Source of the DNA: Ylistrum balloti | Lineage: Eukaryota | NCBI RefSeq assembly: GCF_031769215.1 | Contig: NW_026782196.1 | Span: forward strand, 3,162,001-3,226,000 | Length of the DNA stretch: 64,000 bases | Direction: 5' to 3' | In this document: positions 6,985-47,537 of the stretch, piece by piece | Numbering within the stretch: the first letter of the stretch is position 1 | How the letters are laid out: each line of letters begins with the position of its first letter | Position numbers and translations under genes: made by a program | The notes under the pieces: model-generated | What the model saw: the letters and a program-made list of their open reading frames with translations, nothing else | Told to the model about the DNA's origin: nothing | The model's database searches: none

Positions 6985-6990
6985 CAATGA

Positions 6991-7312
6991 CACAGTGACA
7001 TTATTTACCCATGAACGTACCGTGACATCTACTACCAATGTACGTACACAGTGACATCCATTACCAATGTACGTACACATGACATCCATTACCCATGTAC
7101 ATAAACAGTGACATCCATTACCAATGTAGGTACACAGTGACATCCATTACCAATGTACGTACACAGTGACATCCATTACCCATGTACGTACACAGTGACA
7201 TCCATTACCCATGTACGTACACAGTGACATCCATTACCAATTTACGTACACAGTGACATCCATTACCAATATACGTACACAGTGACATCCATTACCCCTG
7301 TTCATCAACAGT
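6991..7312. repeat. 29-bp minisatellite, about 11 copies (CAGTGACATCCATTACCCATGTACGTACA)
   Basis: Directly visible periodicity; its reverse complement recurs at 39010-39590. Confidence 0.95.
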
Positions 7313-8110
7313 AACATCCGGACTTCTTGGCATTATTAACTGAATGAAAACGATAAATACAATATTCTCAACCTACCTTTCCATTTCAAATGATATTTTC
7401 TTTCATTTTTTAACTTGCAAAATAATTAATTCCACAAATTAATAAATGTCTCAAAATATCGTTTATCTTCTTATTTTTGTGTAAACGGCTCACACGACTA
7501 AATCAGCACATGAGCGAGTGGAATTCTGTTTCATCCTGGTAGATCAAAATTGTGATTTTTATAAAAGATTGTGCTCTCTGGGGTTGAATGAATAGAGGAC
7601 CCGTCAGATATATTGATTGGCATACATTTGAAATATTGGGGCGAATGAAAAAAATTTTAAATGTTCGGGATAAATATTTTGACCGGAAGTTTTATTTTCC
7701 ATTTATTTTCCCAAGAAGTGTAACAATAGAAACGAAAATGCATTGATATATACTTCTGTATTTGAAGAAATGTCAATTGGCGTAACAACAAACACATGCG
7801 TTCTGTAACCTGATACCAAATATTAATCTTATTCTATACACAGTAGTACCAATTAACGTTAGAGCACATCTGTAGATTACATTATGTATGTGTTATAGCT
7901 AAATACTATCGTCTAAGAGTGATAACTCCTTTGGAGCTAATATTCAGGTGTCGCGGTGCTACAGTTGTGGGATCGCACAATGTTACACGATGTACGATGT
8001 GCGCACGATGTCTCCGCGATGTGCGCACGACCTACACACGAAGATTTTGGTGCGTTGTGCGTTACCACAACTGTACTATCGACAACGCCGATACAACGGG
8101 GTATCTTAGT

Positions 8111-8157
8111 ACACACACACAAACGCTCACATACACACACACACATCAACACATACA

Positions 8158-8217
<60 letters not shown>

Positions 8218-8233
8218 TTATATATATATATAT
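8111..8233. repeat. (CA)n followed by (TA)n microsatellite
   Basis: Directly visible. Confidence 0.97.
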
Positions 8234-8590
8234 TATGTACATATGTATATATGTAAGTCCATATGTATACAGTCACATTAAAAAAAGCTATTCCTGTGTG
8301 AAAACTTGATGAAATTCACTGAAAATATATTTGTATTTGGATGGTTTTTTTAGAATTTTTATTTCTTGATGTGAACAACATAACATTGATATAACTACCA
8401 CAAACAGACATGAGTGGAGATGATCTCTGTATCTATGGTAAATAGGGGTAAATAACAACGTAATACATCAGTATTCATCTCATCAGTCATCGAGAATTCG
8501 GGAAGTTCGTACTTATTTACAATGTCCGTTTTCATGGAAAAGTCATTGCACGGTCAGACTGGTTTCCGCTTTGTCCTTGAATTAATTTAG

Positions 8591-8598
8591 TATATAAA
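8591..8598 (+). promoter_or_regulatory. Candidate TATA box of the methyltransferase gene, with a non-coding first exon ending at about 8699
   Basis: TATATAAA is conserved in both arms and is followed about 100 bp later by a donor (CTG|GTATGT left, CAG|GTATGT right). The ATG exon is preceded by an acceptor (TTCTTTTCAG at 9980-9989). Confidence 0.45.
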
Positions 8599-9999
8599 TA
8601 GATAACGACGCTCTCCACAATATCGTGTGAATCTTAAGCTCTGTAGACGGCACTCTGAGTCCTTCTTGACACACCGCTAAAGACTTCCTTGTCATACTGG
8701 TATGTAAAATTTCTTATTTTATTATCATTATTATTATTTTGAATTTTCTTTCGAAACAAAACCCTTAGAATTAAAGCATGCAGGTAGGCAACAGGTTACA
8801 ATTCTCCCGTAAAATTAAAATTTTCTTCTTATGAACCCGATAAAATGTAATATTACGGCAATTCCAAACTTTCTTACTTGGCGATATAACCAGTGTTCAT
8901 AAACAGTTGCTGCTGATCATGAAATTGAAAAAAAAAAAAAATGCAAAATAGTTGTTTTGCCCAACAAATTATGACATACCTTCACAGAAGCTATATCTTG
9001 TAAGTATCTGACATAGTAACACTTGTTTCGTCTATTCCTGTCACCCGATCGGAAAATCTTTGAAACATAATTTAAAACAAAAAGTCATGCTGCCTTGTGC
9101 TTCCATTTCAGAATCTGAATAACAGTTTTACATAGTATGTGCGAACTGTTTAAGCAATACTACAGTTAATAATAATAATTGGCTTTTTATTATAACTACT
9201 GAAAAAATAATCTGTTTTTCATTTTATGGTTTATGTAACTGTAAGATATGTTTTTAATTTCATAAATAAATACAAAGTCACCCCCTCTGTAAGGTTGGCC
9301 TTTTTCATTCATATTCATTGTTGTGTCGATTCTTGTCGTAGTGTGCATATACATAAATGATCATTAAGATAAAACTATAATAAAATAAACAATTTGGTAA
9401 AATTACGGCGTGAAATTTATTTCTTATATTGGCAAAATATTCATGTCGTCACGTGTTGGTATGTTGTTTATCTATAGTCTAGTGAGGTTTACCCATGCAC
9501 CATGCAATTCTATTTTTATCTGACCGTCTATGACCAATGTTTTTCATGAAAATGTTATTTCAATGTAAAGTTCGTCTGAACTCTGCTGCAGGTATTCAAG
9601 CATTAAACCCACCCGTAATATCATTCAACATGGCTCTACATGATGATTTCACAATCCTAAAAAAAACTTCTCTTGTTTCCGCTCGATGACCACTGTCCGA
9701 GTCTATATATCTTTTTGATGATGCAATTTAGTGTTATTGTATTTATCTCTAAACTTGTATTAAAGGGTGCTTGTTTGTATTTTGTACAATTTAACATATT
9801 GGTTCGATATTACTTCATTATAAGCTATCTACCAGTAAGTAATAGTTGTATGTTTATCCTATCTATATTACGTTATATATGTCCAGTTGTTGATGTTTCA
9901 TTGTTTCTTTCATTGTTTTAATTGGTAGACTAGAAAAGCTTTGGCGGATTAAAATTATTTGACTTAACTAACTAACGTATTCTTTTCAGATCTTTAGAT

Positions 10000-12900
10000 A
10001 TGAATCGAAAGTTGTACACGGCCCTGGTTGGTAAAGCTGTTAGAGACCCAATAGTGCGTTCTGGCATGAAATTGGCCAGCAGGGTGAATTTATTCCAGGC
10101 GTTGAGGGAGAAACCCATGACCGTGCGCACACTTGCTTCTGAACTAAACATGAAAGAGAGGTAAGGGTTAATAATTAAAGGAAGCGCAAATGATTACCTC
10201 CCTTAGTGCACATAGGATTGTAGAGAAGATAGCAACTTCTATCGTTACCTCTCTCAGTGAACATAGAATTGTTATTGTATCTCAGAGTGTTGTGAAGCCA
10301 TTTATTAAAAGAGCATGATATCATTGTATTTCTGTGTATTGTGGAGTCCCTGTCTCTCTCACATCTTTTTAGTTAGATCCCAAAAGTACTACTTCATAAT
10401 CTTTCTTTGAAATTGTACACTGTGATTACATTTGGCGTCTGTACCTGTATCTGCTGGTGTTGCAACTCAGAAAAAGAAAACTCACCAAATGGGCAAGCTA
10501 TTTCGAGTGTCGTAATGCCCTGCGTTTGATACAGGATAAATTACTTGTAATTTGCAAAGCGGATAAAGGAAGGTATTTAATTGATAAATAGTGGACAAAT
10601 GTATTCTCCATTAGGTTTGTTGACATCAACTAATTATTTTCTTCTGATTCCATATGTACAGTCTTAATCTATCATGGTGGGACTGACCATTGTAAGTCAT
10701 GTCAGTGTAGCTAGATAAACAGTCAGTCGGCTAGCTATTACTCTTATACATACAACAAATAGATGTTATTACCCAGTTCTATTTTTAATGTCCATGTAAT
10801 ATATAGTTAATCTTATTTACCGAGACTTTGACATTAGTACGTTGTCCTCTTCTCTGAATGAATTAAACATTTTGTTTTAGGTATATATGGGAGCTCAGCC
10901 AGGCCATGATGGCGTCCGGCGTGATCACCATGGATGCAGAGGAGCAATTAGCCATACCACCAGATTGTGCTGACATATTGTTAGCTGAGACAGAAAAAGC
11001 TGCTTGGAATCCCCATCTTTTTAAGACCTTACCCATCCTTGATAGCTGTTTTCCGTTGGATGGAAAACCAGGTTTGTATTATTTATGTTAACTGAAAAAA
11101 TCAATTGGTAATATAATGTTAATATTTGCCTAATCCAACATTATTTGGATGTAAGCAAGTGCTTTTTTTTTTAATTCGGCGGCTATTTATTTAGGTGACA
11201 TGCATAATCAAAGTTTACATTGTTGGGAATGTATTGTAGTGTTCGCATTGAACATTTATTTTGTATTTTCTGTTCAGTAGGAAAGATCTCATTGGACCAA
11301 GATAATCTAGACTCTATGTCTGTTTGCACAAAAACTTTAGATAATGAAGTACACTCAAATGTGTATCTATCAACATCTTGCTTATTTCCAAGGTCCGACA
11401 AAAAAACTAACAATTCAGAATTAATGTTAAAGAGTGAAACAATTCATCTACGGTACTCTATGGGTTACACCCTGTACCCCTGGAACGTTCCAGGATTACA
11501 TTGAAGAATTCATGACTCCATGTGGATCAGACGAGAAAACTAGTTTGATCCTTTCATGTAAAATTCGAGATCGCACGGTATGTAGCACTGGCTTTGGTGT
11601 TGGGTGCCGCTCCTGTGTAATCTTGAAAGGGGGATATCGGTATGTTATTGCTCAGTTTTTTGTGTTTTTTTTTCTGAAACCTGTTCTATGCTTGCTCCTA
11701 AATATGTACTTATACGAACACCGTTGAAATATGGTATTTTGACTTGGCATTATACTGAATATCCACTATATTCTTTGACAATATGAATATTCTATTTTAA
11801 AATTGAGATGAAAGACTTTAATTATAATTTAATCATAAACAGGAAACTTGTGGTCTGTTTTGGTTGTCAAAGCAAATGCATCTATCAAGTTTTATTTTGT
11901 AATATCTTGCGCCAACATCATGATACTGGGAACAAGCCATAAAATCAATGGCGACATGTACCTTGTAAACCTGGTGTCCGAAAGTGGAAAATTCACGATA
12001 GGGCAATTGAAATCATCACGCTTATCATAAAGACTGGTGGAAAACTGATTTAGGACTGAATCCTACTTCTTAATCCGGCACCACGTGGAATACATGCATA
12101 TACAAGTAACACGGGATGGACGTGTTGAACTGACGTCTGTACTAGAAAAATCCTGCGCACCTAGCGAGGCATATATATGAATCTTCATTCCTGTAATTTC
12201 AGGTTACACACTTGATGAGGCACCGTTTGTGTTGGATTTGCTAAATGAAGTTCGATCTCCATACAGAGCAAGTTTGGTTAAAGAACTCGTGTCCAACATT
12301 AACCTCTATTACACGGGAGGTAAGTTACTGTTTAAACTTAACCGAGAAACAGCTTGCCATCCGGGAAGGTAAAGGTAATTAAAACCCTCAAATAAAAGAT
12401 AGAATCGTGACTTAGACTGGTAATTAGGCTTTCTTTACGGGGAAAATATATATAACAGAGAATTGTCAATGTTTCTTGTCAAAACGACGAAAAACATGAA
12501 AGACAAAGAAACAACAGTGTTAATTATGATGGATATAAATATCTGCAGCATAAACCATGTTTTATTACAAGGGGAAAAAAAGCATAAGAAAAAACTAAAC
12601 AACATTTGGAACTGATTTTAGTGATATATAAAATAAATAATCAACCAGAGGGAGGAAGTAATGAACAAATATGTGTCGCCGCAATAAAGGTGTAATAAAG
12701 AAAATAGAAATGTTGTAAAACTATTTTGTGGAAACTCGAGAGTTTGTTAACAAGACATCTGGAATTAATATACTACTTTATTATAAATAGATAAAGAGTC
12801 GGTTATGTTCTATCATATAAACATAGAGAAAAAAATTTCTTATCAAAATAATGGAGGAAAATTCATTATCTTATTAGGGAAATACAGTAGTATTCAGTAA

Positions 12901-13924
12901 ATTCACTTATTCCAATGATCGTAAATGTATACAAGATATTTCATGTAACAGAAATTATCCTATTTAGTGAATTTGATCAATCGTTGATACTTCGATAGAT
13001 TTAATGATGTACTAGTTACTTATGGATATTGTTTCCAAAACAGTAAACGTTTTTTTTATAAAAATTAAAGATAAGACCAAACCATGGCCGGTTTACCGAG
13101 TTCTTTCATCACTGAATATACTTAAGATTTTCTCTAGGGATGTCCGCGTGGTGTATTAGTAAATTGGTTGTAAGGCACGATTAAAAAATGTCTTTCAACG
13201 TAATTACGTGTTTCTGTGTCAAAATACAAAACTATTAAACACAATGTACTACGTAAAGTATTTGATACAAAGGTTTATTTTTTATTAAAGTTTGTTGTAT
13301 GTGCATATTTGTTGCATATGTTTTCTTCATTTCGATTCAGGTAACCTGAAAAATGTGCTGGATGTTGGATGTGGTTCAGGAGATATCACTATTTCCCTGG
13401 CAGAGCAAATGAAAGGTGTCAATGTTGTCGGGTGTGACACATCGGAAAAGGCTATCGTCACTGCATCAAAATCTTCTACAAAGGTCAAAAACGTGTCATT
13501 TACTCATGTAGATGGTGGAGCCTACCAAAAGGATTGGATAAAAAAATTTGACGTCATCCTGATGTTCGATGTCCTTCATGATCTTCCACATCCCGAAGAA
13601 ACCATGACAGAAATTATAAAAGTGCTGAAGGATGACGGTATTATGATTATCATTGACCCAGACGTCAGCAACAACCCTCAAAATAACATAGGGAACCTTC
13701 ACGCCGCCAACGCTCTCACCTTCAGCTCGTTCTACTGCGTTCCTAGCAGCTGCTGTCATGCTCACAGTTCCGCTCTAGGTATCAGCTGGGGAAGAGAAGG
13801 AAAAGAGTATTTACTCAACAGTTTAGGGTTGGTCGTAAGAAACAGGGTATCGCTTATCAAAAGTATGTTCTTTCACGCGTTTGTCTGTGTCAAATCCTCG
13901 TCGGCAACAGAAAAGAAACTGTAG
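10000..13924 (+). CDS. SAM-dependent methyltransferase, Rv2258c-like (N-terminal winged-HTH plus class I MTase), 350 aa, intact
   Basis: Exons 10000-10160, 10881-11071, 12203-12319 and 13341-13924 (1053 nt; phases 2,1,1; all GT-AG). Motifs: LNMKERYIWELSQAMMASGVI (cf. family LxERYVxEWLxAMxxxG), VLDVGCGSG (motif I), FDVILMFDVLHDLPHPE, SSFYCVPSS, LGISWGRE. Confidence 0.9.
11579..12109. mobile_element. 531-bp insertion in intron 2 of the left methyltransferase copy, flanked by a CACGG direct repeat
   Basis: Absent from the right arm, which reads GATCGCACGG-GATTGACG. CACGG occurs at 11574-11578 and 12110-12114. The element class is not identifiable. Confidence 0.5.
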
Positions 13925-16900
13925 CAATCTTCAGAATATAGCAATGGCATGTCCACTGACGCGTAATGTCTTGATTCGGTACCAGGTGATAAGCTGATTC
14001 GTTATTTTCTTGTTTTAACGCCAGTAGGTACATGGTGTACACTTGTGTACTTATACGAAATAGCAAGTGAATAACTCGCAAAACAATGTCACGAACATAC
14101 CAAAACGTATGATAAACCACGTATCTTATATGTCAATACATACGTAGTTTCCTAACATGAATGTAGGTTTTAGATTTTATTCTGTATAGTGTGCATTTCT
14201 ATTCTTTTGTAGTCCATTGTACTGAACCTAACCTTGCTGAAATAACATAACGGAATTTGTTAGACATTTTTCTTTGTGGATAAACCTGTTTAATTTACTC
14301 GAAGATATGAACGGGTTTATCATGAATTTACGTGTATATATTATATATTACAATGTATATACCATTTGGAGTCCGTAAAACGTTTGACTCACATGACTTT
14401 GCGATGCTTGTATTTCTGTACCAGGAGCATAGCATTAGGTAGCTTTGTATAGATTACACAACTTCACGCCTGACTAATATACACAGCTTACATACATACA
14501 CATGTATGCCATTTAAAAACAAGAAAGAAAATACTGACATGCTGATCGAATCTGAATTCATTATGTAATATGTTGATGCACTTCTGAAGCGATTTTCAAA
14601 GCATAGAGTCATCTAGATTATATTTTTGCGTGTTACATGATTGATTTTAGGTTAAACATTACATGTTTCAAAAACATTTCATTTACAAAAATGTCAATCT
14701 AAATTGATAATTAAAAATACAAATTTTTTAAAAGAGCAAAGCATTTCCGAACTTGTGTTTTGGCCTAAACCAAGCACTCAATACACATGAGCTATTTTCT
14801 GTTAGAGTTACCTCCCCTATACGTGTCGTTGTGCGACAGGTTTCCATATTTTATTCAATTTCGAAGAAATACGACTATGTTGAGCATTACATGATTCTTG
14901 TTAGTTTTAATTGAAATAATTAATTACGTTTGCACGGAGTACACTTTTCAAGATGTATGCTGATACGGATTTGAATGTTTTGGCCATGCAAATATCTTGT
15001 CACGGGAGGAGCAATTTACAATGTACCCTTTTCACTCTCGCGAGAATAGGACATGATATACAGTTCTGTATCATGTTCTTTTGCTTACTGCCTTTCCTTG
15101 CTACAACATCGAGTAACTGAAGATTAAATCTTAAATTACAGAGAATCAAGCTACGTTTATATAACTCAATACTATATTTCGCTGCGGTTTCACTACTTGC
15201 TTCGAAATAATTTCTCCATGGAATACTGCTTCTGGTTTTTGTAGTATCATAAAATTAATAGCAACACATATGGAAAGGGAGGTCATTATGTCAAGTCTGA
15301 TTAATTGAACTGTGTTATTAAACTTTTTTATAATTTGAGAAATGTCACGCATCACTTGTGTCGATTAATCACTATACCGTGCATATACAAAGAACAAGTC
15401 TGCAATTTATCTCCTTTTTGATCAATGATTATTTTAAATGTATAGATAACATATTGCTACTGCTATATAATCATCCATCGTCATACATGTAAATTACATA
15501 CTTATAAATGTACATTTTGTTTACCAACTACTTTTTTTTAATTCGCACTACATTTGATAAATGGTCTATTTTGCAAAAGATATCTGTAAAAAGTAACCAG
15601 ACCCCGTATCTACGTGTAATATACTTAAATTCATATCAGGATAAGATATTGTATCTTACCTACATGGTTAACGATGCTCATTCGATGTACGTAAATGTAT
15701 ATAGAAGATTCACAGATGACCGTAGCCGAATTCACTACAGTACATTGTGACCATCTGGTGCATTTTTGGTCTATAATCTGATTACCATCTCGTCACACTA
15801 TTTTCGACCTTAGTGTACATAAGATTATAGTGTAGCCGAAAAAGCTGGTCGATTCCGTACCATCTCGTACACTACGTACATCAGTGCTTGTACGCTCCAC
15901 ACTGGTCATGTGTCAGATGAAGGTGACCGTGTAGTCATCGACACGTCACACTCTAGTCTTCTACTGGTTATGTCATAAGAAATTATATTCTATTGACACT
16001 ACAAACCCGTAGAAAATGTTCCAAGACATCTAACCTTTAGGTTTGATCATGGATATATCATGTTATTTTCCTATTGGCTGAAAATGCTCAGTTGGATATA
16101 GACATATCGTTCAGTTTAATTTTAATTCAAAGTTATTAGAGTTAATTGAAGTTTTACTTTGTATTTCAGAACAACGGAAAATGTTAAAGATCTGTATACA
16201 AATGAAATTGGACTACAGCCAAAATCTGCAATCGCCCCCATTTAAGGAGGAAAAAAATTCTATAAAGCTACATTTCCATGAATCTAAATATCTTTATGTA
16301 TGTAGCAACATTAGCATGATCTATGGTCATGGAAATAAGAAAATATTACGATTTTATCATTTATTATAATACAAATATTTAGTTTAATTATAAAGACTTC
16401 CATAAGGACAGTTCTCTATTCAAACTAACTGTGAAGGTCACCACACACAATGTGTATACGCAAGACTGTTGACGAGTAGACAAACACTTGTGTTGACGTA
16501 TATACTAAACTTATCATCTATCGAAAGAGGAATAACTGTATGTTGGAATAGATAAAAGATTTCTACTCATCAGATCACGCCCCCCTTATTTCTAGGAAGG
16601 TCTTGAAGGTATTGTTTTTGCCGCTAAATTAGTTTCTGTGAGATAAATGGCAAATCTCAGAAGTATCTCTTTTTTCAATGCTTATCTAAACTGTTTTTAG
16701 AATATATTTATACAACAACTTCATCATCATCATACGTACATATTAATTGGCACTGTTTGGTCTATATATAAAAAGTTATCAATCAGAAGTAAATTGAGTC
16801 TGTTATATACTGTACACCGATGTTGATTCAAAATCTATAAATGTATACAGATTCACGTGTGACCGACATCACGTGTGACCGACATCTGGTCATTGTGTTT

Positions 16901-28265: not shown

Positions 28266-28851
28266 GTAAGTATATAATACTTTCAGGAAGTAGACGAGAG
28301 TCGTTTAACCTAATGTTATAAGATGTATAAGAAATATTTTCTGCTTAAATGGATATTAAAGAGAAGAAAATTTGATATGGATATGTCTCTCTGTTAATGC
28401 TTTAATGAAAGAGTGTGTTATTTACCTAATTGTAGTGGTCGTTATCAGTTACAAAACTACAGGTGAACGTTTTCTGTCCAAGAAGACATTATAATAAGGA
28501 GATTAATTAAGTTTCGGTTTTTAAAAATAATTAATCCATTAGAAATGTTAGAAGAGATGACTTTCTTCAGAAGTTTCAGAATATCATTAAATGATTCGAT
28601 TTCTTTAAATTCCAGGACCATCTAATACTTTTCTACTTTCTGTATTTCTATTTCAAAATTGCACTATGATATTAAATAATTACAAGGAAGGATATTTGAT
28701 GTCATATGTTTATACATGCTGACTTTTAGACTGATCTGATATCGTGGCATGTATAATTGTGTTATCTCGAGTGGATGTTTAATCGGACTGTGAATGTACA
28801 CTTGGTATTATCTGCTAATATCGAACTTAAATATCTATTCATTTGTTGATG

Positions 28852-30310
28852 CGTAATCGGTGTCCTGGTGAACTCTGAATGTCCAGCTGACGTTCTTTTG
28901 TTTTGTGGATGTGTAATCGGTGTCCTGTTTAACTGTGAATGTCCAGCTGGCGTTCTTTTGTTTTGTGGATGTATAATTGGTGTCCTGTTGAACTGTGAAT
29001 GTCCAGCTGGCGTTCTTTTGTTTTGTGGATGTATAATTGGTGTCCTGTTGGACTGTGAGTGTCCAGCTGGCGTTCTTTTGTTTTGTGGATGTATAATTGG
29101 TGTTCTGTTGAACTGTGAGTGTCCAGCTGGCTTTCTTTTGCTTTGTGGATGTATAATTGGTATCCTGTTGAACTGTGAATGTCCAGCTGACGTTCTTTTG
29201 CTTTGTGGATGTATAATTGGTGTCCTGTTGAACTGTGAGTGTCCAGCTGGCGTTCTTTTGTTTTGTGGATGTATAATTGGTGTCCTGCTGAACTTTGAGT
29301 GTCCAGCTGACATTCTTTTGCTTTGTGGATGTATAATCGGTGTCCTGTTGAACTGTGAATGTCCAGCTGACGTTCTTTTGCTTTGTGGATGTATAATCGG
29401 TGTCCTGTTGAACTGTGAATGTCCAGCTGACGTTCTTTTGCTTTGTGGATGTATAATCGGTGTCCTGTTGAACTGTGAATGTCCAGCTGACGTTCTTTTG
29501 TTTTGTGGATGTATAATCGGTGTCCTGTTGAACTGTGAATGTCCAGCTGACGTTCTTTTGTTTTGTGGATGTATAATTGGTGCCTTGTTGAACTGTGAGT
29601 GTCCAGCTGGCGTTCTTTTGTTTTGTGGATGTATAATTGGTGTCCTGCTGAACTGTGAGTGTCCAGCTGACATTCTTTTGCTTTGTGGATGTATAATCGG
29701 TGTCCTGTTGAACTGTGAATGTCCAGCTGACGTTCTTTGGCTTTGTGGATGTATAATCGGTGTCCTGTTGAACTGTGAATGTCCAGCTGACGTTCTTTTG
29801 TTTTGTGGATGTATAATCGGTGTCCTGTTGAACTGTGAATGTCCAGCTGACGTTCTTTTGTTTTGTGGATGTATAATCGGTGTCCTGTTGAACTGTGAAT
29901 GTCCAGCTGACGTTCTTTGGCTTTGTGGATGTATAATTGGTGTCCTGTTGAACAGTGAATGCCCAGCTGACGTTCTTTGGCTTTGTGGATGTATAATCGG
30001 TGTCCTGTTGAACAGTGAATGTCCAGCTGACGTTCTTTTGCTTTGTGGATGTATAATCGGTGTCCTGTTGAACTCTGAATGTCCAGCTGACGTTCTTTTG
30101 TTTTGTGGATGTATAATCGGTGTCCTGTTGAACTGTGAATGTCCAGCTGACGTTCTTTGGCTTTGTGGATGTATACTTGGTGTCCTGTTGAACAGTGAAT
30201 GTCCAGCTGACGTTCTTTTGCTTTGTGGATGTATAATCGGTGTCCTTTTGAACTCTGAATGTCCAGCTGGCGTTCTCTTGTTTTGTTGATGTATAATTGG
30301 TGTCCTGTCG
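28852..30310. repeat. Highly homogeneous 60-bp satellite, about 24 copies
   Basis: Successive 60-nt lines are nearly identical (TGTCCTGTTGAACTGTGAATGTCCAGCTGACGTTCTTTTG(T/C)TTTGTGGATGTATAAT(C/T)GG). Confidence 0.97.
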
Positions 30311-30689
30311 AACTCTTCATGTCGAGCTAAGATTGGTTTGTGGATATATAATCGATGTCTCGTTGGTTTGTGATGTAAAACTGGTCTCATGCTGTATAAC
30401 ATATATATTTCAATTTCAACTACTTTCATGAACTTTTCATATGTTGATAGGATCTGGCAACAAGTTATTCCGTTTTCAGTCCAAAATTAGTACATGAATA
30501 CAATTCATATCCTGCAAAACGATACATTAATTCATTGAAATATAATTAAAGAGGTAAGGGGAGGTAACGCCAATTTGTTATAGTACATAAAACGCTTACT
30601 TATTAAATTTATAAAGTTAAAGTATGCTTTGGACATTTTAAAGTATGCTTTGAACATTTTAATTTCATTTTACAAATATTAGAATTTAT

Positions 30690-31740
30690 TGATAAGTTGT
30701 CAGAAATGAATCCTTGGATACATATTGTAGTGCATGTCAAATTGATGTTATATTTTATTATTTTGGATGTCAAAATTGTGTCTCGTTTTATTGTGGACGT
30801 CAAACTTGTTTCATTTTGTATTGTGCCATGTTGTATTGTAGATGTCAAACTTGTGTCATGTTGTTTTGTGGATGTCTAACTTGAGACATGTTTATTAAGA
30901 ATATTAAACTTATGTCTCGTTTTATTGTGGACGTAAAACTTGAGTCATGTCGTAATATGAATATCAACCATATGTTATGTTGCATTGTAAATATAGAACA
31001 ACTTTTGGCAGGATGTATTGTGAATATCAAACTGGTGCCATGTTGTATTTTGGATGTACACCTTCTGTAGTTTGTTGTATTGTAAATGTCTTACTTAAGG
31101 CATGTTTATTATGAATGCTGTATTGTGTTGCCAAACTTGCGTTATTTTGTATTTGTTAATGTCAACCTTGTGTCATGTTGTATTGTGGATGTGAAACTTA
31201 TGACATGCTGTATTGTGAATGTAGAACTTCATTCGTGTTGTATTGTTGATGTCAAACTTGTGTCATGTTGTATTGTGGATGTCAAACCTTGTGTCATGCT
31301 GTATTGTGGATGTCAACTTTGTGTCATGTTGTATTGTGGATGTCAATCTTGTGTCATGTTGTATTGTGGATGTCAACATTGTGTCATGTTGTATTGTGGA
31401 TGTCAACATTGTGTCATGTTGTATTGTACATGTAGAACGTCTGTCGTGTTGTACTTCGGATGTTAAATTTGCTTCTCGTATTGTGAATGTCAACCTTGTG
31501 TCATGTTGTAATGTTGATGTCAAATTTATGTCATGCTGTATTGTGTATGTAGAACTTCTGTGTTGTTTTATTGTGGATGTCAAACTTACGTCATGTTGTA
31601 TTGTGAATACAAATCTGGTTGTAAGTTGGATGAAGATATCAAACTTGCTCCATATTGTATGTTGATGCCAATCTTGTGCTCTCATGTACTATAGCTGTTG
31701 ACCTTGAGTCATGTTGCACTGTTCGTAGTTAACTTGTATC
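30690..31740. repeat. Degenerate 30-bp satellite (TGTGTCATGTTGTATTGTGGATGTCAAACT)
   Basis: 30-bp periodicity, cleanest at 31240-31430. Confidence 0.88.
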
Positions 31741-33713
31741 ATGTTGAGTTCCGTTAATGCTTTGTTACCTTTGCTATCGGCTTGGTGTTAAATATAACTT
31801 TGTCTTCGTGGCATTGGTACATACAATGATTAATGAAGAAATCTTATATATTATGTGTGCTGTTTTCATTGAAATTGATCTATTGAATAGATGTTTTCCT
31901 AACATTGTCTTCATTTCAATTAAAATAAAAACGTAATGATTTGAATACTGAATATTACTAGATTACAAAGATTCATTTAATAAGTTTTCTTATATAATTC
32001 TAATTGGTTGTTAAATAGCACTAATATGAATTATATTTGCCTTTTCAAATTCATGTATTTATGTCAATTATTAAGATAATTGTACTTCCATATTTCTTTA
32101 CTTTATCTTTTTAATTGTTCTTTTACAGATTGGTGCATTAATGGAAGGAGAAAACAATTGAAATTCGTCATGCATTGTGTTACATTTCAATAAATACGGT
32201 CATTCTTTGATAATGATTACGTTAAATGTAAAGGAATTTGAATTCATAGATGGTGATTTTCGATTAACTTTTATTTATCTCTATTGTATACTGTGCCTTC
32301 AATGTATGTTTATCTAAAATATGTAATAAGCTTCATTTTACTTATCTTAGCAGATTTTTGCTCTCTGTTACTTTGTCTGTTCAGAAATATGGTTATTGGA
32401 GAAATTCCTGCCACATCAACAGAATGGAGTGGAATTGCCGATCCGCAGAGTCGAACAGTAAAGTAAATATTCATAGATATTGGCATTTATCTGTGTTAAT
32501 GGTTATCGGTAAAACACGAAGTATAAGGGTCATTTTGTTCCCTACATATGATACCAGTTATAGCCTGTCCTAAGAGGTGTCCACTTCCGTCGATAAGTGA
32601 TTCATGATGAATGTTAAAAACATTGACAAATCTATTCGAGGTTATCACAAAACCACCCTATTGTCAGCATAACAACACCACTAACATTACCATTGATTAT
32701 CATACAGGTGTAACATGGCCTAGAGCAACTAAGATTGGCAAGAGGTTGATATTGTTATCACAGTATCATTGCCAAAGCTTTGTGGCACCATATATTTGCG
32801 ACACATCAAAGAAAGAGATGTGGAGTGAGAATATCGCCACTTTAGATTCCTTGTATTAGTCTAAATAAAAGTTATATTTACAAATAGTTACAAAAGTATC
32901 TATTGTATATGATAAACTATACTTATATTCGTTTCCATTTAATATGGAACTGTAGGCGATCGCACTTAAAGGCAATCTAACCTGAATTACTGTTTTATGT
33001 CAGTTCGTGAATATAAAAGCTCTATATTTTGCCGAAAACTGGGTCAAACTTGCAATTTCAACAAGTTGACATCCTAAATAACCTGATCGAATGGTTGATG
33101 ATTTGAATTTTTATTAAGATTGGCTAGAGGCGAGAAAAGTATTGTGTTCGAGAGTCAGGAACACCGATATCAATGTCCAGGCCGATGTCTTGGAATAATA
33201 ATATGTTGACACAGCTCATCTCCTTTACACTGGTATGTAAAATGAGATTTATCCAGGATGAACTATCGATATAGCATGAGGAAAAATCTACATTAATATC
33301 AATTCTGAATATATTGTTTGCGAGTAACAGTGTTCAATATGACGTTTCCAAATATCAGTTGAAACTACTTTTGCTATAACGCGCCTGTGGTGCATTATAA
33401 ATCGCGGCTAGGTTAAATTCACTGTACCACAAAAGGATTGAAATGCACACTATACAGAATAAAATCTAAAGCTACATTCATGTTAGGAAACTACGTATAA
33501 ATTGACATATAAGATACATGGTTTATCATACGTTTTGGTATGTTCGTGACAATGCTTTGCTAGTTATTCACTTGCTATTTCGTATAAGTACACAAGTGTA
33601 CACCATGTACCTACTGGCGTTAAAACAAGAAAATAACGAATCAGCTTATCACCTGGTATCGAATCAAGACATTACGCGTCAGTGGACATGTCATTGCTAT
33701 ATTCTGAAGATTG

Positions 33714-36700
33714 CTACAGTTTCTTTTCTGTTGCCGACGAGGATTTGACACAGACAAACGCGTGAAAGAACATACTTTTGATAAGCATACCCTGCTTCTC
33801 ACGACCAACCCTAAACTGTTGAGTAAATACTATTTTCCTTCTCTTCCCCAGCTGATACCTAGAGCGGAACTGTGAGCATGACAGCAGCTGCTAGGAACGC
33901 AGTAGAACGAGCTGAAGGTGAGAGCGTTGGCGGCGTGAAGGTTCCCTATGTTATTTTGAGGGTTGTTGCTGACGTCTGGGTCAATGATAATCATAATACC
34001 GTCATCCTTCAGCACTTTTTTAATTTCTGTCATGGTTTCTTGGGGATGTGGAAGATCATGAAGGACATCGAACATCAGGATGACGTCCATTTTTTGTATC
34101 CAATCCCTCTGGTAGGCTCCACTATCTACATGAGTAAATGACACGTTCTTGACCTTTGTAGATTTTGATGCAGTGACGATAGCCTTTTCCGATGTGTCAC
34201 ACCCGACACCATTGATACCTTGCATTTGCTCTGCCTGGGGAATAGTGATATCTCCTGAACCACATCCAACATCCAGCACATTTTTCAGGTTACCTGAATC
34301 AAGATGAAGAAAACATATGCAACAAATGTGCACATACAACAAACAAAAAATAAACCTTTGTAGCAAATACTTTACTTTGTACATTGTATTTAATAGTTTT
34401 GTATTTTGACACAGAAACACGTAATTACGTTGAAAGACATTTTTTAGTCGTACCTTACAACTAATTTACTAATACACCACGCGGACATCCCTAGGGAAAA
34501 TATTAAGTATATGCAGTGATGAAAAAACTCGGTAAACCGGACACGGTTTGATCTACATGTAACCGTGGGTGGATAGACTACCAAAACCCCTTCTTTGGTT
34601 GGAAAATGATTTAATTGTCTGAAGAAGACCTAAAATTAAAAATACAATTATAAATACACATTCACTCACACACCTTGCACACTGCGGTAAATTATGAGGA
34701 ATGTTTTATAGTTTGAAGATTACAATATATTAATGTGACTTATATTAATTAAGCTTACCAGGGACGCCGGCTTTGGTGCTCTGTCAGATTTGACAGGTTA
34801 GCCTACGTGTTGACTGTCTGAGTGATGCTGTGCGAGTGTGGTGGCTCTTGGTGGGAGTTGGCGGTGACTGGACAGAGGACGTGAACTCGACGTGCACATA
34901 CATACATTCTTTCATACTTGCTTTACGCGATGATTTAAAATGATGTATTCTATCACCTGGCTACATACATTACAAATATCTTTATTTTTTTTATAACGTT
35001 TACTGTTTTGGAAACAATATTCATAAGTAACTAGTACATCATTAAACCTGTTGATGTATCAACGATTGATCAAATTCACAAAATAGGATCATTTCTGTTA
35101 CATGAAATACCTTGTATACATTTACGATCGTAAGTGAATTTACTGAATACTAATGTAGTTCCCGAATAAGATAATGAATTTTCCTCCATTATTTTGATAA
35201 GAATTTTTTTTCTCTATGTTTATATGATAGAACATAACTGACTCTTTATCTATTTATAATAAAGTAGTATATTAATTCCAGATGTCTTGTTAACAAACTC
35301 TCGAGTTTCCACAAAATAGTTTTACAACATTTCTATTTTCTTTATTACACCTTTATTGCGGCGACACATATTTGTTCATTACTCCCTCCCTCTGGTTGAT
35401 TATTTATTTTATATATCACTAAAATCAGTTCCAAATGTTGTTTAGTTTTTTCTTATGCTTTACTTCTTTCTTTTCAACATATGTAATAAAACATTGTTTA
35501 TGCTGCAGATATGTATATCCATCATAATTAACACTGTTGTTTCTTTGTCTTTCATGTTTTTCGTCGTTTTGACAAGAAACATTTTACAATTCTCTGTTAT
35601 AGAATTTTTCCCCGTAAAGAAAGCCTAATTCATAACCTAAGTCACGATTCGATCTTTTATTTGAGGGTTTTAATTACCTTTACCTTCCCGGATGGCAAGC
35701 TGCTTCTCGGTTAAGTTTAAACAGTTACTTACCTACCGTGTAATTGAGGTTAATGTTGGACACGAGTTCTGTAACCAAACTTGCTCTATATGGAGATCGA
35801 ACTTCATTTAGCAAATCCAGCACGAACGGTGCCTCATCAAGTGTGTAACCTGAAATTACAGGAATGAAGATTCATATATATGCCTCGTTAGGTGCGCAGG
35901 ATTTTTCTAGTACAGACGTCAGCTCAACACGTCAATCCCGTGCGATCTCGAGTTTTTTAACTTTCGTTTACATGAAAGGATCAAACTAGTTTTCTCGTCT
36001 GATCCACATGGAGTCATGAATTCTTCAATATAATCCTGGAACGTTCCAGGGGTACAACGAAAGTGAGCGTAACCCATAGGGTATCGTAGATGAATTGTTT
36101 CACTCTTTAACATTTATTCTGAATTGTTAGTTTTTTGCCGGAACTTTGTAAATAAGCAAGATGTTGATAGATACACATTTGAGTGTACTTCATTATCTAA
36201 AGTTTTTGTGCAAACGGACATAGAGTCTAGATTATCTTGGTCCAATGAGATCTTTCCTACTGAACAGAAAATACAAAATAAATGTTCAATGCGAACACTA
36301 CAATACATTCCCAACAATGTAAACTTTGATTATGCATGTCACCTAAATAGCCGCAGAATTTTTTTTTTTTTTTTTTTAAAAAGCACTTGCTTACATCCAA
36401 ATAATGTGGGATTAGGCAAATATATACATTATATTATCAATTGATTTTTTCAGTTAACATGAATAATACAAACCTGGTTTTCCATCCAACGGAAAACAGC
36501 TATCAAGGATGGGTAAGGTCTTAAAAAGATGGGGATTCCAAGCAGCTTTTTCTGTCTCAGCTAACAATATGTCAACACAATCTGGTGGTATGGCTAACTG
36601 CTCCTTTGCATCCATGGTGATCACGCCGGACGCCATCATGGCCTGGCTGAGCTCCCATATATACCTAAAACAAAATGTTTAATTCATTCAGAGAAGAGGA

Positions 36701-37549
36701 CAACAAACTAATGTCAAAGTCTCGGTAAATACGCTTCACTATATATTACATGGACATTAAAAATAGAACTGGGTAATAACATCTATTTGTTGTATGTATA
36801 AGAGTAATAGCTAGCCGACTGACTATGTTTATCTAGCTACACTGACATGACTTACAATGGTCAGTCCTACCATGATAGATTAAGACTGCACATATGTTAT
36901 CAGAAGAAAATAATTAGTTGATGTCAACAAACCTAATGGAGAATACATTTGTCCACTATTTATCAATTAAATACCTTCCTTTATCCGCTTTGCAAATTAC
37001 AAGTAATTTATCCTGTATCAAACGCAGGGCATTACGACACTCGAAATAGATTGCCCATTTGGTGAGTTTTATTTTTTCTGAGTTGCAACACCAGCAGATA
37101 CAGGTACAGACGCCAAATGTAATCACAGTGTACAATTTTAAAGAAAGATTATGAAGTAGTACTTTCAGGATCTATCTAGAAAGTTGTGAGAGAGACAGGG
37201 ACTCCACAATACACAGAAATACAATGATATCATGCTCTTTTAATAACTGGGCTTCACAACACAATGATACACAATGACAATCCTATGTTCACTGAGAGAG
37301 GTAACGATAGAAGTTGCTATCTTCTCTACAATCCTATGTGCACTAAGGGAGGTAATCATTTGCGCTTCCTTTAATTATTAACCCTTACCTCTCTTTCATG
37401 TTTAGTTCAGAAGCAAGTGTGCGCACGGTCATGGGTTTCTCCCTCAACGCCTGGAATAAATTTACCCTGCTGGCCAATTTCATGCCAGAACGCACTATTG
37501 GGTCTCTAACAACTTTACCAACCAGGGCCGTGTACAACTTTCGATTCAT
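33714..37549 (-). pseudogene. Disrupted second copy of the Rv2258c-like methyltransferase
   Basis: Exons 37549-37389, 36664-36474, 35849-35733 and 34293-33714. GAG>TAG nonsense at 33830-33832, a 1-bp deletion near 33786, a 3-bp deletion (SKSSTK>SKSTK) and many replacements. Confidence 0.88.
34558..34965. mobile_element. Solo LTR, 408 bp, Gypsy-type termini
   Basis: Starts TGTAACC and ends GGCTACA (6/7 inverted match); 4-bp TSD TACA at 34554-34557 and 34966-34969; absent from the left arm. Confidence 0.8.
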
Positions 37550-39009
37550 ATCTAAAGATCTGAAAAGAATACGTTAGTTAGTTAAGTCAAATAATTTTAA
37601 TTCGCCAATGCTTTTCTAATCTTCAAATCAAAACAATGAGGCATGAAAGAAACATCAACAACTGGATATATAAAACCTAAAAATAGATAGGATAAACATA
37701 CAACTATTACTTACTGGTAGATAGCTTATAATGAAGTAATATCGAACCAATATGTTAAATTGTACAAAATATAAACAAGCACCCTTTAATACAAGTTTAG
37801 AGATAAATACGATAACACTAAATTGCATCATCAAAAAGATATATAGACTCAGACAGTGGTCATCGAGCGAAACGAGAATTTTTTAGGATTGTGAAATCAT
37901 CATGTAGAGCCATGTTGAATGATATTACGGTTGGGTTTAATGCTCGAATACCTGCAGCAGAGTTCAGACGAACTTAACATTGAAATAACATTTTCATGAA
38001 AAACATTGGTCATAGACGGTCAGATAAAAATAGAATTGCATGGTGCATGGGTAAACCTCACTAGACTATAGATAAACAACACACCAACACGTGACGACAT
38101 GAATATTTTGCCAATATAAGAAATAAATTTCACGCCGTAATTTTACCTAATTGTTTATTTTATTATAGTTTTATCTTTATGGTCATTTAACTGTAGTATT
38201 GCCTTAACAGTTCGTACATACTATGTAAAACTGTTATTCAGATTGTGAAATAAAGGCACAAAGCAGCATGACTTTTTGTTTTAAATTATGATTCAAAGAT
38301 TGTCCGATCGGATGGAATAGAAGAAACAAGTGTTACTCTGTCAGATACTTACAAGATATAGCTTCTGTGAAGGTATGTCATAATTTGTCGGGCAAAAAAA
38401 CTATTTTGCATTTTTTTTTTTTTTCAATTTCATGATCAGCAGCAACTGTTTATGAACACTGCTTATATCGCCAAGTAATAAAGTTTGGAATTGCCGTAAT
38501 ATTACATTTTTTCGTGTTCATAAGAAGAAAATTTTAATTTTACGGGGGGATTTAAAGAACTGAGAAAATAATCTAATGTCGCTAGAATTTCTCTTTCATT
38601 AAAAAGCTATTGAATGGTGTAACCTGTTGCCTCCCTGCATGCTTTAATTCTACGGGTTTTGTATCGAAAGAAATTCAAAATAATAATAATGATGATAAAA
38701 TAAGAAATTTTACATACCTGTATGACAAGGAAGTCTTCAGCGGTATGTCAAGAAGGACTCAGAGTGCCGTCTACAGAGCTTAAGATTCACACGATATTGT
38801 GGAGAGCGCCGTTATCGATTTATATACTATTAATTCAAGGACAAAGCGGAAACCAGTTTGACCGTGCAATGGCCTTTCAGTATGATTTTCCATGAAAGTG
38901 GACATTGCAAATAAGTACGAACTTCCCGAATTCTCTATGACTGATAAGATGAATACTGATGTATAACGTTATTATTTACCCCTATTTACCATGGATAGAG
39001 ATCACTGTA

Positions 39010-39590
39010 GATGTACATGGGTAATGGATGTCACTGTGTACGTACATTGGTAATGGATGTCACTGTGTACGTACATGGGTAATGGATGTCACTGTGTACC
39101 TACATGGGTAATGGATGTGATTGTGTTCGTACATGGGTAATGGATGTCACTGTGTACCTACATTGGTAATGGAGTCACTGTGTACGTACATGGATAATGG
39201 ATGCCATTTTTACGTACATGGGTAATGAATGTCACTGTGTACGTACATGGGTAATGGATGTCACTGTGTACCTACATTGGTTATGGATGTCACTGTAGAC
39301 GTACATGGGTAATGAATGTCACTGTGTACGTACATGGGCAATGGATGTCACTGAGTACGCACATGGGTAATGGATGTCACTGTGTACGTAAATAGGTAAT
39401 GGATGTCAATGTGTACGTACATTGGTAACGGATGTCACTGTACGTACATTGGTAACGGATGTCATTGTACGTACATGGGTAATGAATGTCATTGTGTACG
39501 TACATGGGTAATGGATGTCACTTTGTACGTACATTGGTTATGGATGTCACTGTAGACGTACATGGGTAATGAATGTCATTGTGTACGTAC
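39010..39590. repeat. 29-bp minisatellite, about 20 copies (reverse complement of 6991-7312)
   Basis: GTACATGGGTAATGGATGTCACTGTGTAC periodicity. Confidence 0.95.
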
Positions 39591-39733
39591 ATACGTATAT
39601 ATGTAAGTGTAGAACAGGGTACCAAAATATGTGGTGACAATATGAAAACATTTATGGTGTCTGTATCAACAAAAAACAGGTGTAACATTCCTGGGGGAAA
39701 TTAAGTGTTAGGATAAATACCTGAAAACCTTAT

Positions 39734-41215: not shown

Positions 41216-47537
<6,322 letters not shown>

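What the first reader, a model, noticed from the sequence alone, without database searches (positions are those of the whole stretch)
6991..39590. 33-kb imperfect palindrome enclosing an Ig gene, with a methyltransferase in each arm
About 7 kb of homologous sequence is present in inverted orientation around a 10-kb spacer. The outer ends fall in the same 29-bp satellite. The inner breakpoint (22013/32119) lies just upstream of a splice acceptor and, on the left, next to a HINE-like repeat. Each arm has private indels, so this is not a simple read fold-back. The geometry permits arm-to-arm conversion and inversion of the spacer (inference).
Basis: partly seen in the sequence, partly recalled or inferred. 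Interest (0 to 1): 0.7.

Follow-up and report, generated by a model that had tools for sequence, protein, structure and literature searches.

The report
Old inverted duplication of methyltransferase gene
In the scallop Ylistrum balloti, a chromosome segment carrying a methyltransferase gene was copied in reverse orientation about 10 kb away and the second copy is now decaying; it is a real but ordinary gene duplication, not an actively maintained palindrome.

Summary
Window 8421-22032 and 39004-32100 are inverted copies: 6,371 aligned bases at 95.1% identity, around a 10,067-bp unique spacer. Both outer ends lie in the same 29-bp satellite.

The window is Ylistrum balloti. Each arm carries a four-exon Rv2258c-like SAM-methyltransferase gene, and the two genes converge on the spacer. 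Both are already RefSeq loci:
- **Left copy (LOC132552245):** full length, 350 aa.
- **Right copy (LOC132552330):** a GAG>TAG stop at codon 312, a 1-bp deletion downstream, a lost codon, and 10 of 14 polarisable replacements. It also lacks about 8.3 kb present on the left and has gained a young 422-bp repeat.

The copies are sister to each other and have single orthologues in three other scallops.

Contigs from four other sequencing runs cross the right inner junction, and several runs hold both arm types. An assembly fold-back or haplotig is therefore unlikely, although read depth and arm-spanning molecules could not be tested.

Divergence is even along the arms and the longest identical run is 187 bp, so nothing shows ongoing arm-to-arm conversion. 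Spacer inversion remains possible but untested.

The spacer holds a small gene with a signal-peptide exon and three tandem Ig exons, one of them frameshifted.

The scan noted other inverted duplications in this genome. This one is ordinary and of low interest.

The parts
6624..7319 (.). Left outer satellite: 28-bp variant at 6624-6990, then the 29-bp unit at 6990-7319
   Evidence: TRF; inverted BLAST HSPs to 39002-39613 at 77-89%
7320..8420 (.). Left-private 1.1 kb between the satellite and the start of homology. Contains an (AC)n run and a ~70-120-bp dispersed fragment; the rest is single-copy
8421..14228 (+). Left arm, outer segment: 5' flank plus the whole methyltransferase gene
10000..13924 (+). 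Left methyltransferase gene LOC132552245 (XP_060072380.1, 350 aa). CDS exons 10000-10160, 10881-11071, 12203-12319, 13341-13924, all with GT/AG introns; full length
   Evidence: Exact translation match to P0012; Pfam Methyltransf_31 4e-24; PDB 5F8C, E 1.2e-15
14229..20721 (.). Left-private 6.5-kb block absent from the right arm. Only 18378-19630 is a dispersed LINE-tail fragment; the rest is single-copy. A 5-nt direct repeat TAACC flanks the block
20722..22032 (+). Left arm, inner segment (3' flank), ending at the inner breakpoint
22028..22410 (+). ~380-bp dispersed repeat, often tandem elsewhere, that abuts the left inner breakpoint. A second copy lies at about 24070-24433
22033..32099 (.). 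Unique spacer, 10,067 bp, with no inverted similarity between its ends
25453..28265 (+). Small Ig gene. Signal-peptide-like exon 25453-25531; three tandem phase-1 Ig exons at 26346-26645, 27164-27462 (299 nt, frameshifted) and 27966-28265
   Evidence: Pfam Ig_3/I-set
28842..31605 (.). Spacer minisatellites: 60-bp unit x 24.8 at 28842-30328, and 30-bp units at 30785-31605
32100..33410 (-). Right arm, inner segment, homologous to 20722-22032
   Evidence: junction-crossing contigs in other runs
33411..39004 (-). Right arm, outer segment, homologous to 8421-14228
33830..37549 (-). Right methyltransferase gene LOC132552330 (XP_060072473.1, 311 aa). Canonical-splice exons 37549-37389, 36664-36474, 35849-35733, 34293-33830. 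TAG at 33832-33830 where the left copy has GAG; 1-bp deletion between 33787 and 33786
34555..34976 (.). Right-private 422-bp insertion in intron 3, from a young repeat family (12 or more copies at 94-96%)
   Evidence: contig depth 390-590
39002..39613 (.). Right outer 29-bp satellite, inverted relative to the left one

Best explanation
This is a lineage-specific inverted segmental duplication in the scallop Ylistrum balloti.

**What was copied (inferred).** A segment running from a 29-bp satellite through a four-exon Rv2258c-like SAM-dependent methyltransferase gene and its 3' flank was copied in reverse orientation. The copy sits about 10 kb downstream, on the far side of a small Ig gene. Up to about 15 kb may have been copied.

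**What happened since (shown).**
- The two copies have diverged by about 5% without visible homogenisation.
- The left copy keeps the full 350-codon reading frame.
- The right copy is degenerating. It has a premature stop that removes the last helix and two beta-strands of the fold, a frameshift behind the stop, a lost codon and an excess of derived amino-acid changes.
- The right copy has lost about 8 kb of sequence and gained a young repeat.

**Inferred.**
- The palindromic geometry is a by-product of how the duplication arose: a replication template switch or fold-back repair, with both breakpoints in repeats.
- The palindrome has no function of its own.
- Rare recombination between the arms could still invert the spacer and swap the 3' halves of the two genes.
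For: **Repeat geometry.** Shown. The arm sequence occurs exactly twice in the 648-Mb genome.

**Species and gene identity.** All exons match XP_060072380.1 and XP_060072473.1 at 100%.

**Family.** Pfam methyltransferase domains lie above their cut-offs in both copies. The best solved relative is Rv2258c, PDB 5F8C, at E 1.2e-15 over residues 39-320.

**The copies are recent sisters.** They group together with support 93/100 and branch lengths of 0.027 and 0.036. Each of three other scallop species contributes one closest homologue.

**Decay of the right copy.**
- GAG>TAG plus a 1-bp deletion.
- 17 amino-acid differences: 10 derived on the right, 4 on the left, 3 ambiguous; dN/dS 0.72.
- The missing tail is conserved in all orthologues. 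In an AlphaFold model it forms helix 307-317 and strands 322-327 and 336-340.

**Deletions in the right arm rather than insertions in the left.** The 6.5-kb block is mostly single-copy. A dispersed repeat crosses the edge of the 416-bp left-private block.

**Post-duplication insertion.** The 422-bp right-private element belongs to a family with 94-96% identical copies.

**No homogenisation.** Divergence is 5.2% in the 5' flank, 4.9% in introns, 6.1% in the 3' flank and 2.7% in exons. Identity in 250-bp windows ranges from 91% to 99%.

**Independent data.** Contigs of runs X2, X3 and X5 cross the right inner junction (32041-32315 or 32041-32547). In 32518-32795 the same runs hold two contigs, one with 6-9 and one with 26 differences, matching the right and left arm types.
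Against: - Only Logan contigs were available, so neither read depth nor single molecules linking the arms could be examined.
- Per-contig word depth of arm-specific contigs is 11-17 in X2 and X5. That is lower than the one spacer contig at 31909 (22-27). This is the direction expected if the right arm were hemizygous or allelic. The tool warns that such depths are not interpretable, and the spacer contig may run into a minisatellite.
- The left inner junction lies in a high-copy repeat, and neither it nor the two outer junctions were checked in independent data.
- X5 carries the same organism label as the small 2023 runs and might be the assembly individual.
- Whether the stop codon and frameshift are fixed in the population could not be read from the table.
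- RefSeq still calls the right copy protein-coding.
- No outgroup genome could be fetched, so neither the ancestral arrangement nor which arm is the original is known.
Confidence: 0.85

Rival explanations
1. Assembly artefact. The two arms are the two haplotypes of one single-copy locus, or a chimeric fold-back read, wrongly joined in inverted orientation.
For: Bivalve heterozygosity is high. Contigs of other individuals differ from the reference right arm by 2-5%, which is not far below the 5% arm-to-arm divergence. Arm-specific contigs have lower word depth than one spacer contig. Depth and spanning reads were not testable.
Against: - There is no gap inside the feature.
- All four arm ends join different unique sequence. 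The flanks beyond the satellites and the two spacer ends share no similarity. A haplotig join would therefore need two exact chimeric junctions.
- The right inner junction is present in contigs of three to four other runs from two studies, and both arm types co-occur in each.
- A fold-back read would give near-identical arms, not 95% identity with a private TE and deletions.
Confidence: 0.05
2. The duplication is real but not fixed. The right arm is a segregating presence/absence insertion, hemizygous in many individuals.
For: The right-junction contig has word depth 14.5-15 in X2 and X5, against 22-27 for a spacer contig. Two different insert-free joints at 34553-34988 appear in all four runs, which suggests structural alleles. 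Presence/absence variation is common in bivalves (general knowledge).
Against: The right junction or right-type contigs were found in all four runs laid. Contig depths are declared unreliable by the tool. Five per cent divergence and several private events indicate a long residence time.
Confidence: 0.12
3. An actively maintained palindrome. Arm-to-arm gene conversion and recurrent spacer inversion keep two methyltransferase copies and flip the Ig gene, as in mammalian sex-chromosome palindromes.
For: The geometry permits it. The longest identical run, 187 bp, exceeds the shuffle expectation of 125 bp (2.3% of shuffles reach it). Right-arm contigs of other individuals carry left-arm letters at about a quarter to a third of diagnostic sites, including 32113, which lies 13 nt from the right-specific junction.
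Against: - Identity is 95.1% and even along the arms, against more than 99% in maintained palindromes (PMC3723533, PMC8981503 abstracts).
- The two longest identical runs lie in or start in exons 4 and 1, where constraint explains them.
- One copy carries two disabling lesions that conversion would have erased.
- The shared letters are as well explained by alleles private to the reference.
Confidence: 0.06
4. A large mobile element with multi-kilobase terminal inverted repeats that carries the Ig gene as cargo.
For: Inverted terminal arms end in the same satellite.
Against: The arm sequence occurs only at this locus. No transposase, integrase or polymerase domain was found in the ORFs scanned. 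The arms consist of an ordinary host gene with orthologues in other scallops. No target-site duplication could be sought because the ends lie in satellites.
Confidence: 0.02
5. A hairpin-RNA locus. Read-through from the left gene across the spacer into the antisense right arm gives a long double-stranded RNA that regulates the methyltransferase.
For: The genes converge and the arms are complementary over exons and introns.
Against: No run listed as holding the stretch is on record as RNA, so there is no transcript evidence. The 10-kb spacer contains another gene and three minisatellites.
Confidence: 0.03

Closest known systems
Large palindromes of mammalian sex chromosomes (human Y P1-P8, primate X palindromes; PMC3723533, PMC8981503, PMC8327919)
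   Same: Two inverted arms around a unique spacer, with a protein-coding gene in each arm.
   Different: Those arms are more than 99% identical through ongoing gene conversion, and both gene copies are kept. Here the arms are 95.1% identical, divergence is even along them, and one copy has a stop codon and a frameshift. The arms are also far shorter.
Inverted duplications formed by fold-back or template switching, with a spacer between the copies (PMC3907307; reviewed in PMC9199198)
   Same: An inverted copy separated from the original by a stretch of single-copy sequence, with breakpoints in or next to repeats.
   Different: Those are large, recent, often terminal and pathogenic human rearrangements with mapped junctions. 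Here the event is small, interstitial and old. No junction microhomology is visible at 22032/32100, so the mechanism is inferred, not shown.
Inverted low-copy repeats that mediate inversion polymorphisms by non-allelic homologous recombination (for example human FLNA/EMD and F8 int22h; recalled from general knowledge, not checked here)
   Same: Kilobase-scale inverted repeats flank a gene-bearing spacer, so crossing-over between them would flip the spacer.
   Different: The known cases have about 99% identical repeats. Here the longest perfect match is 187 bp, and no orientation polymorphism has been looked for.
Mycobacterium tuberculosis Rv2258c, a class I SAM-dependent methyltransferase (PDB 5F8C/5F8E/5F8F)
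   Same: It is the best solved relative of the arm gene: E 1.2e-15 over residues 39-320, covering the N-terminal helical domain plus the Rossmann-type domain. NCBI names the Argopecten homologue 'Rv2258c-like'.
   Different: The similarity is distant. The substrate and role of the scallop proteins are unknown, and the animal genes have introns.
The 46-kb inverted duplication of an SLC6 + SLC16 cassette 'with asymmetric fate' noted by this scan elsewhere in the same genome (s1-246963, unchecked)
   Same: Same genome and same kind of structure: an inverted gene duplication whose copies fare differently.
   Different: Different genes and size. I did not examine it.

Membership tests
Inverted segmental duplication (low-copy repeat) | Two copies of non-transposon sequence, at least 1 kb long and at least 90% identical, in opposite orientation on one chromosome | tested here: met
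   6,371 aligned bases at 95.1%; exactly two copies in the genome; content is a host gene with scallop orthologues.
Inverted segmental duplication (low-copy repeat) | Physically real: both copies and their junctions present in independent individuals | tested here: inconclusive
   The right inner junction and both arm types appear in contigs of X2, X3 and X5, and partly in X1. The left inner and both outer junctions, read depth and spanning molecules were not testable.
Maintained (sex-chromosome-type) palindrome | Arm-to-arm identity above 99%, kept by gene conversion (PMC3723533, PMC8981503) | tested here: not met
   95.1% overall and 91-99% per 250-bp window. The longest identical run is 187 bp.
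Maintained (sex-chromosome-type) palindrome | Both arm gene copies intact | tested here: not met
   The right copy has a TAG at codon 312, a 1-bp deletion and a lost codon.
Rv2258c-like class I SAM-dependent methyltransferase | Methyltransferase domain above the Pfam cut-off, with the glycine-rich SAM motif | tested here: met
   Methyltransf_31 scores 85 bits (left) and 74 bits (right) against a cut-off of 27. DVGCGSG is present in both copies.
Rv2258c-like class I SAM-dependent methyltransferase | Full-length similarity to Rv2258c, including the N-terminal helical domain | tested here: met
   PDB 5F8C at E 1.2e-15, query 39-320 against chain 61-348. The model shows helices over residues 3-153 ahead of the Rossmann part.
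Rv2258c-like class I SAM-dependent methyltransferase | Complete fold, including the last helix and two terminal strands | tested here: not met
   Met for the left copy. The right copy ends at residue 311, before most of helix 307-317 and before strands 322-327 and 336-340. This tail is conserved in all orthologues.
Rv2258c-like class I SAM-dependent methyltransferase | Methyl-transfer activity and substrate | not testable with these tools
   No biochemical data. No paper was found linking Rv2258c and molluscs.
Immunoglobulin-superfamily gene (spacer) | Ig domains above the Pfam cut-off in a coherent exon structure | tested here: met
   Ig_3 scores 57, 41 and 45 bits against a cut-off of 30. 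Phases are compatible between the 79-nt signal exon and the 300-nt Ig exons; the middle exon is frameshifted.
DNA transposon with long terminal inverted repeats | Multiple copies and a transposition enzyme | tested here: not met
   Single locus. No such domain in the ORFs scanned.
Helentron/HINE (repeat at the left breakpoint) | Characteristic termini, a sub-terminal hairpin and insertion between T and T | not tested
   Only abundance and boundaries were established: more than 2,700 candidates at 72-75% identity, starting at about 22026-22033. No tRNA or Rfam match.

The most novel reading that the evidence does not exclude
The arms may still exchange sequence. In four other individuals the right arm carries left-arm letters at about a quarter to a third of the diagnostic sites, right up to 13 nt from its private junction. 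The Ig-gene spacer might therefore be polymorphic in orientation in Y. balloti. Crossovers inside the convergent methyltransferase genes would then shuffle the intact and the truncated 3' ends between the copies.
Probability: 0.08. Interest if true: 0.4.

Novelty: new member of a known kind. Interest (0 to 1): 0.15.

Why it matters
The finding matters little beyond annotation.

- **Gene annotation.** LOC132552330 is probably a decaying duplicate rather than a working gene. Its RefSeq model also uses a non-canonical intron.
- **Assembly quality.** This part of the Y. balloti assembly is probably sound.
- **Genome pattern.** It adds one dated-by-divergence example to what looks like a recurrent pattern of inverted gene duplications in this genome.

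Only if the spacer proved to flip between individuals would it become a modestly useful natural system for studying recombination between diverged inverted repeats in a mollusc.

Tried and rejected
- The RefSeq neighbourhood and orthologous loci of other scallops could not be fetched, so synteny and the ancestral arrangement stay open.
- **Reads.** Only Logan contigs were on offer and no listed holder is on record as RNA. The table did not show the stop-codon site.
- **Spacer ends.** A word-size-7 BLAST of one spacer end against the other found nothing, so homology does not resume beyond the repeat at 22033.
- **Junction microhomology.** None was seen at 22032/32100.
- **The 6.5-kb left-private block.** I first took it for a LINE insertion and rejected that: only 1.25 kb is dispersed repeat. 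Its 5-nt flanking repeat fits either a target-site duplication or a microhomology deletion.
- **ORF scans.** Pfam gave nothing for ORFs in the arms' 3' flank, the private block and the flanks. It gave only low-complexity hits for the minisatellite ORFs.
- **RNA genes.** No tRNA or Rfam family lies in 6000-40000.
- **Literature.** No genome paper for Y. balloti, nothing on Rv2258c in molluscs, and nothing on inverted segmental duplications in bivalves.
- **Spliced models.** My own right-copy CDS was used only inside scripts for translation and dN/dS.
Full report
**Source and observation.** The window is G000:C339:3162001-3226000 of a 648.5-Mb assembly. All exons of two RefSeq proteins of the scallop Ylistrum balloti match it at 100%. 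They are XP_060072380.1/LOC132552245 and XP_060072473.1/LOC132552330.

- Co-linear inverted matches join 8421-22032 to 39004-32100.
- A global alignment gives 6,371 ungapped columns at 95.1% identity, JC distance 0.050 and 35 gap events.
- The spacer, 22033-32099, is 10,067 bp. Its ends show no inverted similarity even at word size 7.
- Both outer ends lie in the same 29-bp satellite in opposite orientation: 6990-7319 and 39002-39613. A related 28-bp variant lies at 6624-6990.
- That satellite is otherwise found only as 62-74% similar arrays on five other contigs.
- The arm sequence itself occurs exactly twice in the genome.
- The only N run is at 58099-58235, outside the feature.

**Anatomy of the arms.** The arms are very unequal in physical length, 13.6 kb on the left and 6.9 kb on the right. 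About 8.3 kb is private to the left, in blocks at 7297-8425, 9167-9353, 11563-11978, 12015-12108 and 14229-20721. Only 66 + 422 bp are private to the right.

- **The 6.5-kb block is not a LINE insertion.** Only 18378-19630 is a dispersed LINE tail, with more than 3,500 first-look candidates. The rest is single-copy.
- **The edge of the 416-bp block is crossed by an old dispersed repeat** that is complete on the left and cut on the right. At least that difference is therefore a deletion in the right arm.
- **The 6.5-kb block is flanked by a 5-nt direct repeat (TAACC), with one copy on the right.** This fits either a microhomology deletion or a target-site duplication.
- **The right-private 422 bp (34555-34976) belongs to a young family.** It has 12 or more copies at 94-96% identity and contig depth of 390-590. 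It is a post-duplication insertion.
- **The left inner breakpoint abuts a ~380-bp dispersed repeat.** It lies at about 22028-22410, is often tandem elsewhere and has more than 2,700 candidates. A second copy sits at about 24070-24433.
- **The right inner flank is unique**.

**Genes in the arms.** Each arm carries a four-exon gene, and the two genes converge on the spacer.
- **Left, + strand:** 10000-10160, 10881-11071, 12203-12319 and 13341-13924. All introns are GT/AG, and the translation equals the 350-aa RefSeq protein.
- **Right, - strand:** 37549-37389, 36664-36474, 35849-35733 and 34293-33830, using the conserved canonical sites.
- **RefSeq model of the right copy.** The 311-aa RefSeq protein can be reproduced from the window only with a non-GT/AG exon 3/4 junction.

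Both products hit class I methyltransferase families far above their cut-offs. The best solved relative is M. tuberculosis Rv2258c, PDB 5F8C, at E 1.2e-15 over residues 39-320. NCBI names the Argopecten homologue Rv2258c-like.

**Fate of the copies.** Where the left copy has GAG (13805-13807), the right copy has TAG (33832-33830). It also has a 1-bp deletion 45 nt further on and has lost one codon.

The 39 residues removed are conserved in Pecten, Mizuhopecten and Argopecten. An AlphaFold model of the left protein (mean pLDDT 77) places helix 307-317 and strands 322-327 and 336-340 there. The right product would therefore lack the end of the central sheet. That this destroys the fold is an inference.

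- Of the 17 amino-acid differences, 10 are derived on the right, 4 on the left and 3 are ambiguous.
- Several right-arm changes hit positions invariant in the three closest orthologues: Y153N, L176Q, V185G and F226M.
- Between the copies, dN/dS is 0.72 with dS 0.035.
- Divergence is 2.7% in exons against 4.9-6.1% in introns and flanks.
- The copies are sister to each other (support 93/100, branch lengths 0.027 and 0.036), to the exclusion of the homologues found in three other scallop species.
- The next paralogue in the genome is only 52% identical.

**Spacer.** On the + strand lies a small Ig gene.
- A signal-peptide-like exon at 25453-25531 (79 nt).
- Three tandem ~800-bp units, each with one phase-1 Ig exon: 26346-26645, 27164-27462 and 27966-28265. 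All are Pfam Ig_3/I-set positive.
- The middle exon is 299 nt and therefore frameshifted.

The rest of the spacer is three minisatellites, with 37-, 60- and 30-bp units, plus the dispersed repeat. No transposition enzyme was seen. A Cupin_8/JmjC-like gene lies to the right, at 41781-46315 on the - strand.

It is followed by only 3-20 open codons, and nothing shows that it is used.

**Real duplication or artefact?** The structural argument is as follows. The four arm ends join four different unique sequences: the left flank, the two unlike spacer ends and the right flank. Allelic haplotypes or an inversion heterozygote cannot give this layout without two exact chimeric joins. A fold-back read would give identical arms.

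For independent data, one run search found nine holders in three studies, all kept as Logan contigs and none recorded as RNA. I laid four runs on 31601-37600 at 90% likeness: X1-X3 (organism label A, one study) and X5 (label B, another study).
- Contigs cross the right inner junction in X2, X3 and X5 (32041-32315 or 32041-32547). X1 also has a contig there.
- In 32518-32795, X2, X3 and X5 each hold two contigs with 6-9 and 26 differences. The reference arms differ at 21 sites in that interval. These are therefore the right and left types, and both copies exist in each individual.
- Many 'other letters' equal the left-arm state (25 of the 40 listed rows). This includes 32113, only 13 nt from the right-specific junction. 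A k-mer contig can show that only if real reads hold it.
- All four runs agree against the reference at these sites. The simplest reading is alleles private to the reference right arm. Inter-arm conversion cannot be excluded.

Depth cannot be used with contigs, as the tool says. For the record, arm-specific contigs show lower word depth than one spacer contig in X2 and X5.

**Conversion and inversion.** Identity per 250 bp ranges from 91% to 99% with no long identical tract. The longest perfect runs are 187 bp and 180 bp. They lie in exon 4 and from exon 1 into intron 1, against a shuffle mean of 125 bp; 2.3% of shuffles reach 187. Constraint on coding sequence explains them.

The uncorrected stop codon and frameshift argue against homogenisation. 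Recombination between the arms is possible in principle and would invert the spacer and swap the genes' 3' halves. No data bear on it.

**Origin (inferred).** One breakpoint lies in a satellite and the other at the edge of a dispersed repeat. An inverted copy lands 10 kb away, across a single-copy spacer. This is the pattern expected from a replication template switch or fold-back repair (PMC3907307, PMC9199198). No junction microhomology is visible and no outgroup was available, so neither the mechanism nor which arm is the original is shown.

**Comparison and verdict.** The structure shares its geometry with the mammalian sex-chromosome palindromes. It fails their defining features, which are more than 99% arm identity through conversion and intact arm genes (PMC3723533, PMC8981503).

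It is best filed as an ordinary, moderately old, lineage-specific inverted segmental duplication with asymmetric decay. The scan has noted other inverted duplications in this genome (s1-246963, s1-258834). I also found a second, older inverted pair of methyltransferase exons on contig C106: 1.08 kb at 89% identity, 30 kb apart. Both genes are already annotated. What is new is the description of the arrangement and the likely pseudogene status of LOC132552330.

**Limits.**
- The single read-laying run is spent.
- There were no RNA data and no genome of a related scallop.

Noticed in passing
window 25532-26097: Intron 1 of the spacer's Ig gene opens with a 37-bp minisatellite (15 units). Every unit begins GTGAGT, giving a row of about 15 consensus-like 5' splice sites directly behind the signal-peptide exon.
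   Followed up: no
window 27164-27462: The middle of the three tandem Ig exons is 299 nt instead of 300, with a 1-bp deletion near 27402. It would shift the frame if spliced in. The three ~800-bp units are 82-87% identical.
   Followed up: partly
window 28842-30328: A 60-bp minisatellite (24.8 copies, 93% identity) is open in three of six frames, giving ORFs of 555, 473 and 463 aa. Pfam hits are only to low-complexity repeat families, so it is probably not coding.
   Followed up: partly
G000:C106:84298-85359 and 115298-116362: A second inverted pair of methyltransferase-family exons lies elsewhere in the genome: 1.08 kb at 89% identity, about 30 kb apart, and only about 32% identical in protein to the gene studied here.
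   Followed up: partly
window 35733-35748 and 34293-34311: The RefSeq protein of the right copy (XP_060072473.1) requires a non-GT/AG exon 3/4 junction. The canonical GT..AG pair used by the left copy is conserved in the right arm and in frame, so the model probably needs revision.
   Followed up: yes
window 34553-34988: All four other runs contain two different contig joints that skip the 422-bp right-arm insertion: one skips 412 nt with a 5-nt overlap, the other 433 nt with 9 other letters. One is expected from the left arm. The other hints at an insert-free right-arm allele.
   Followed up: no
window 41781-46315 (- strand): A Cupin_8/JmjC-like gene, with three exons detected by Pfam, flanks the palindrome on the right.
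   Followed up: partly
window 22028-22410 and 24070-24433: A ~380-bp repeat family is very abundant in the genome, with more than 2,700 candidates at 72-75% identity, and is often in short tandem arrays elsewhere. Two direct copies lie in the spacer, one exactly at the left inner breakpoint.
   Followed up: partly
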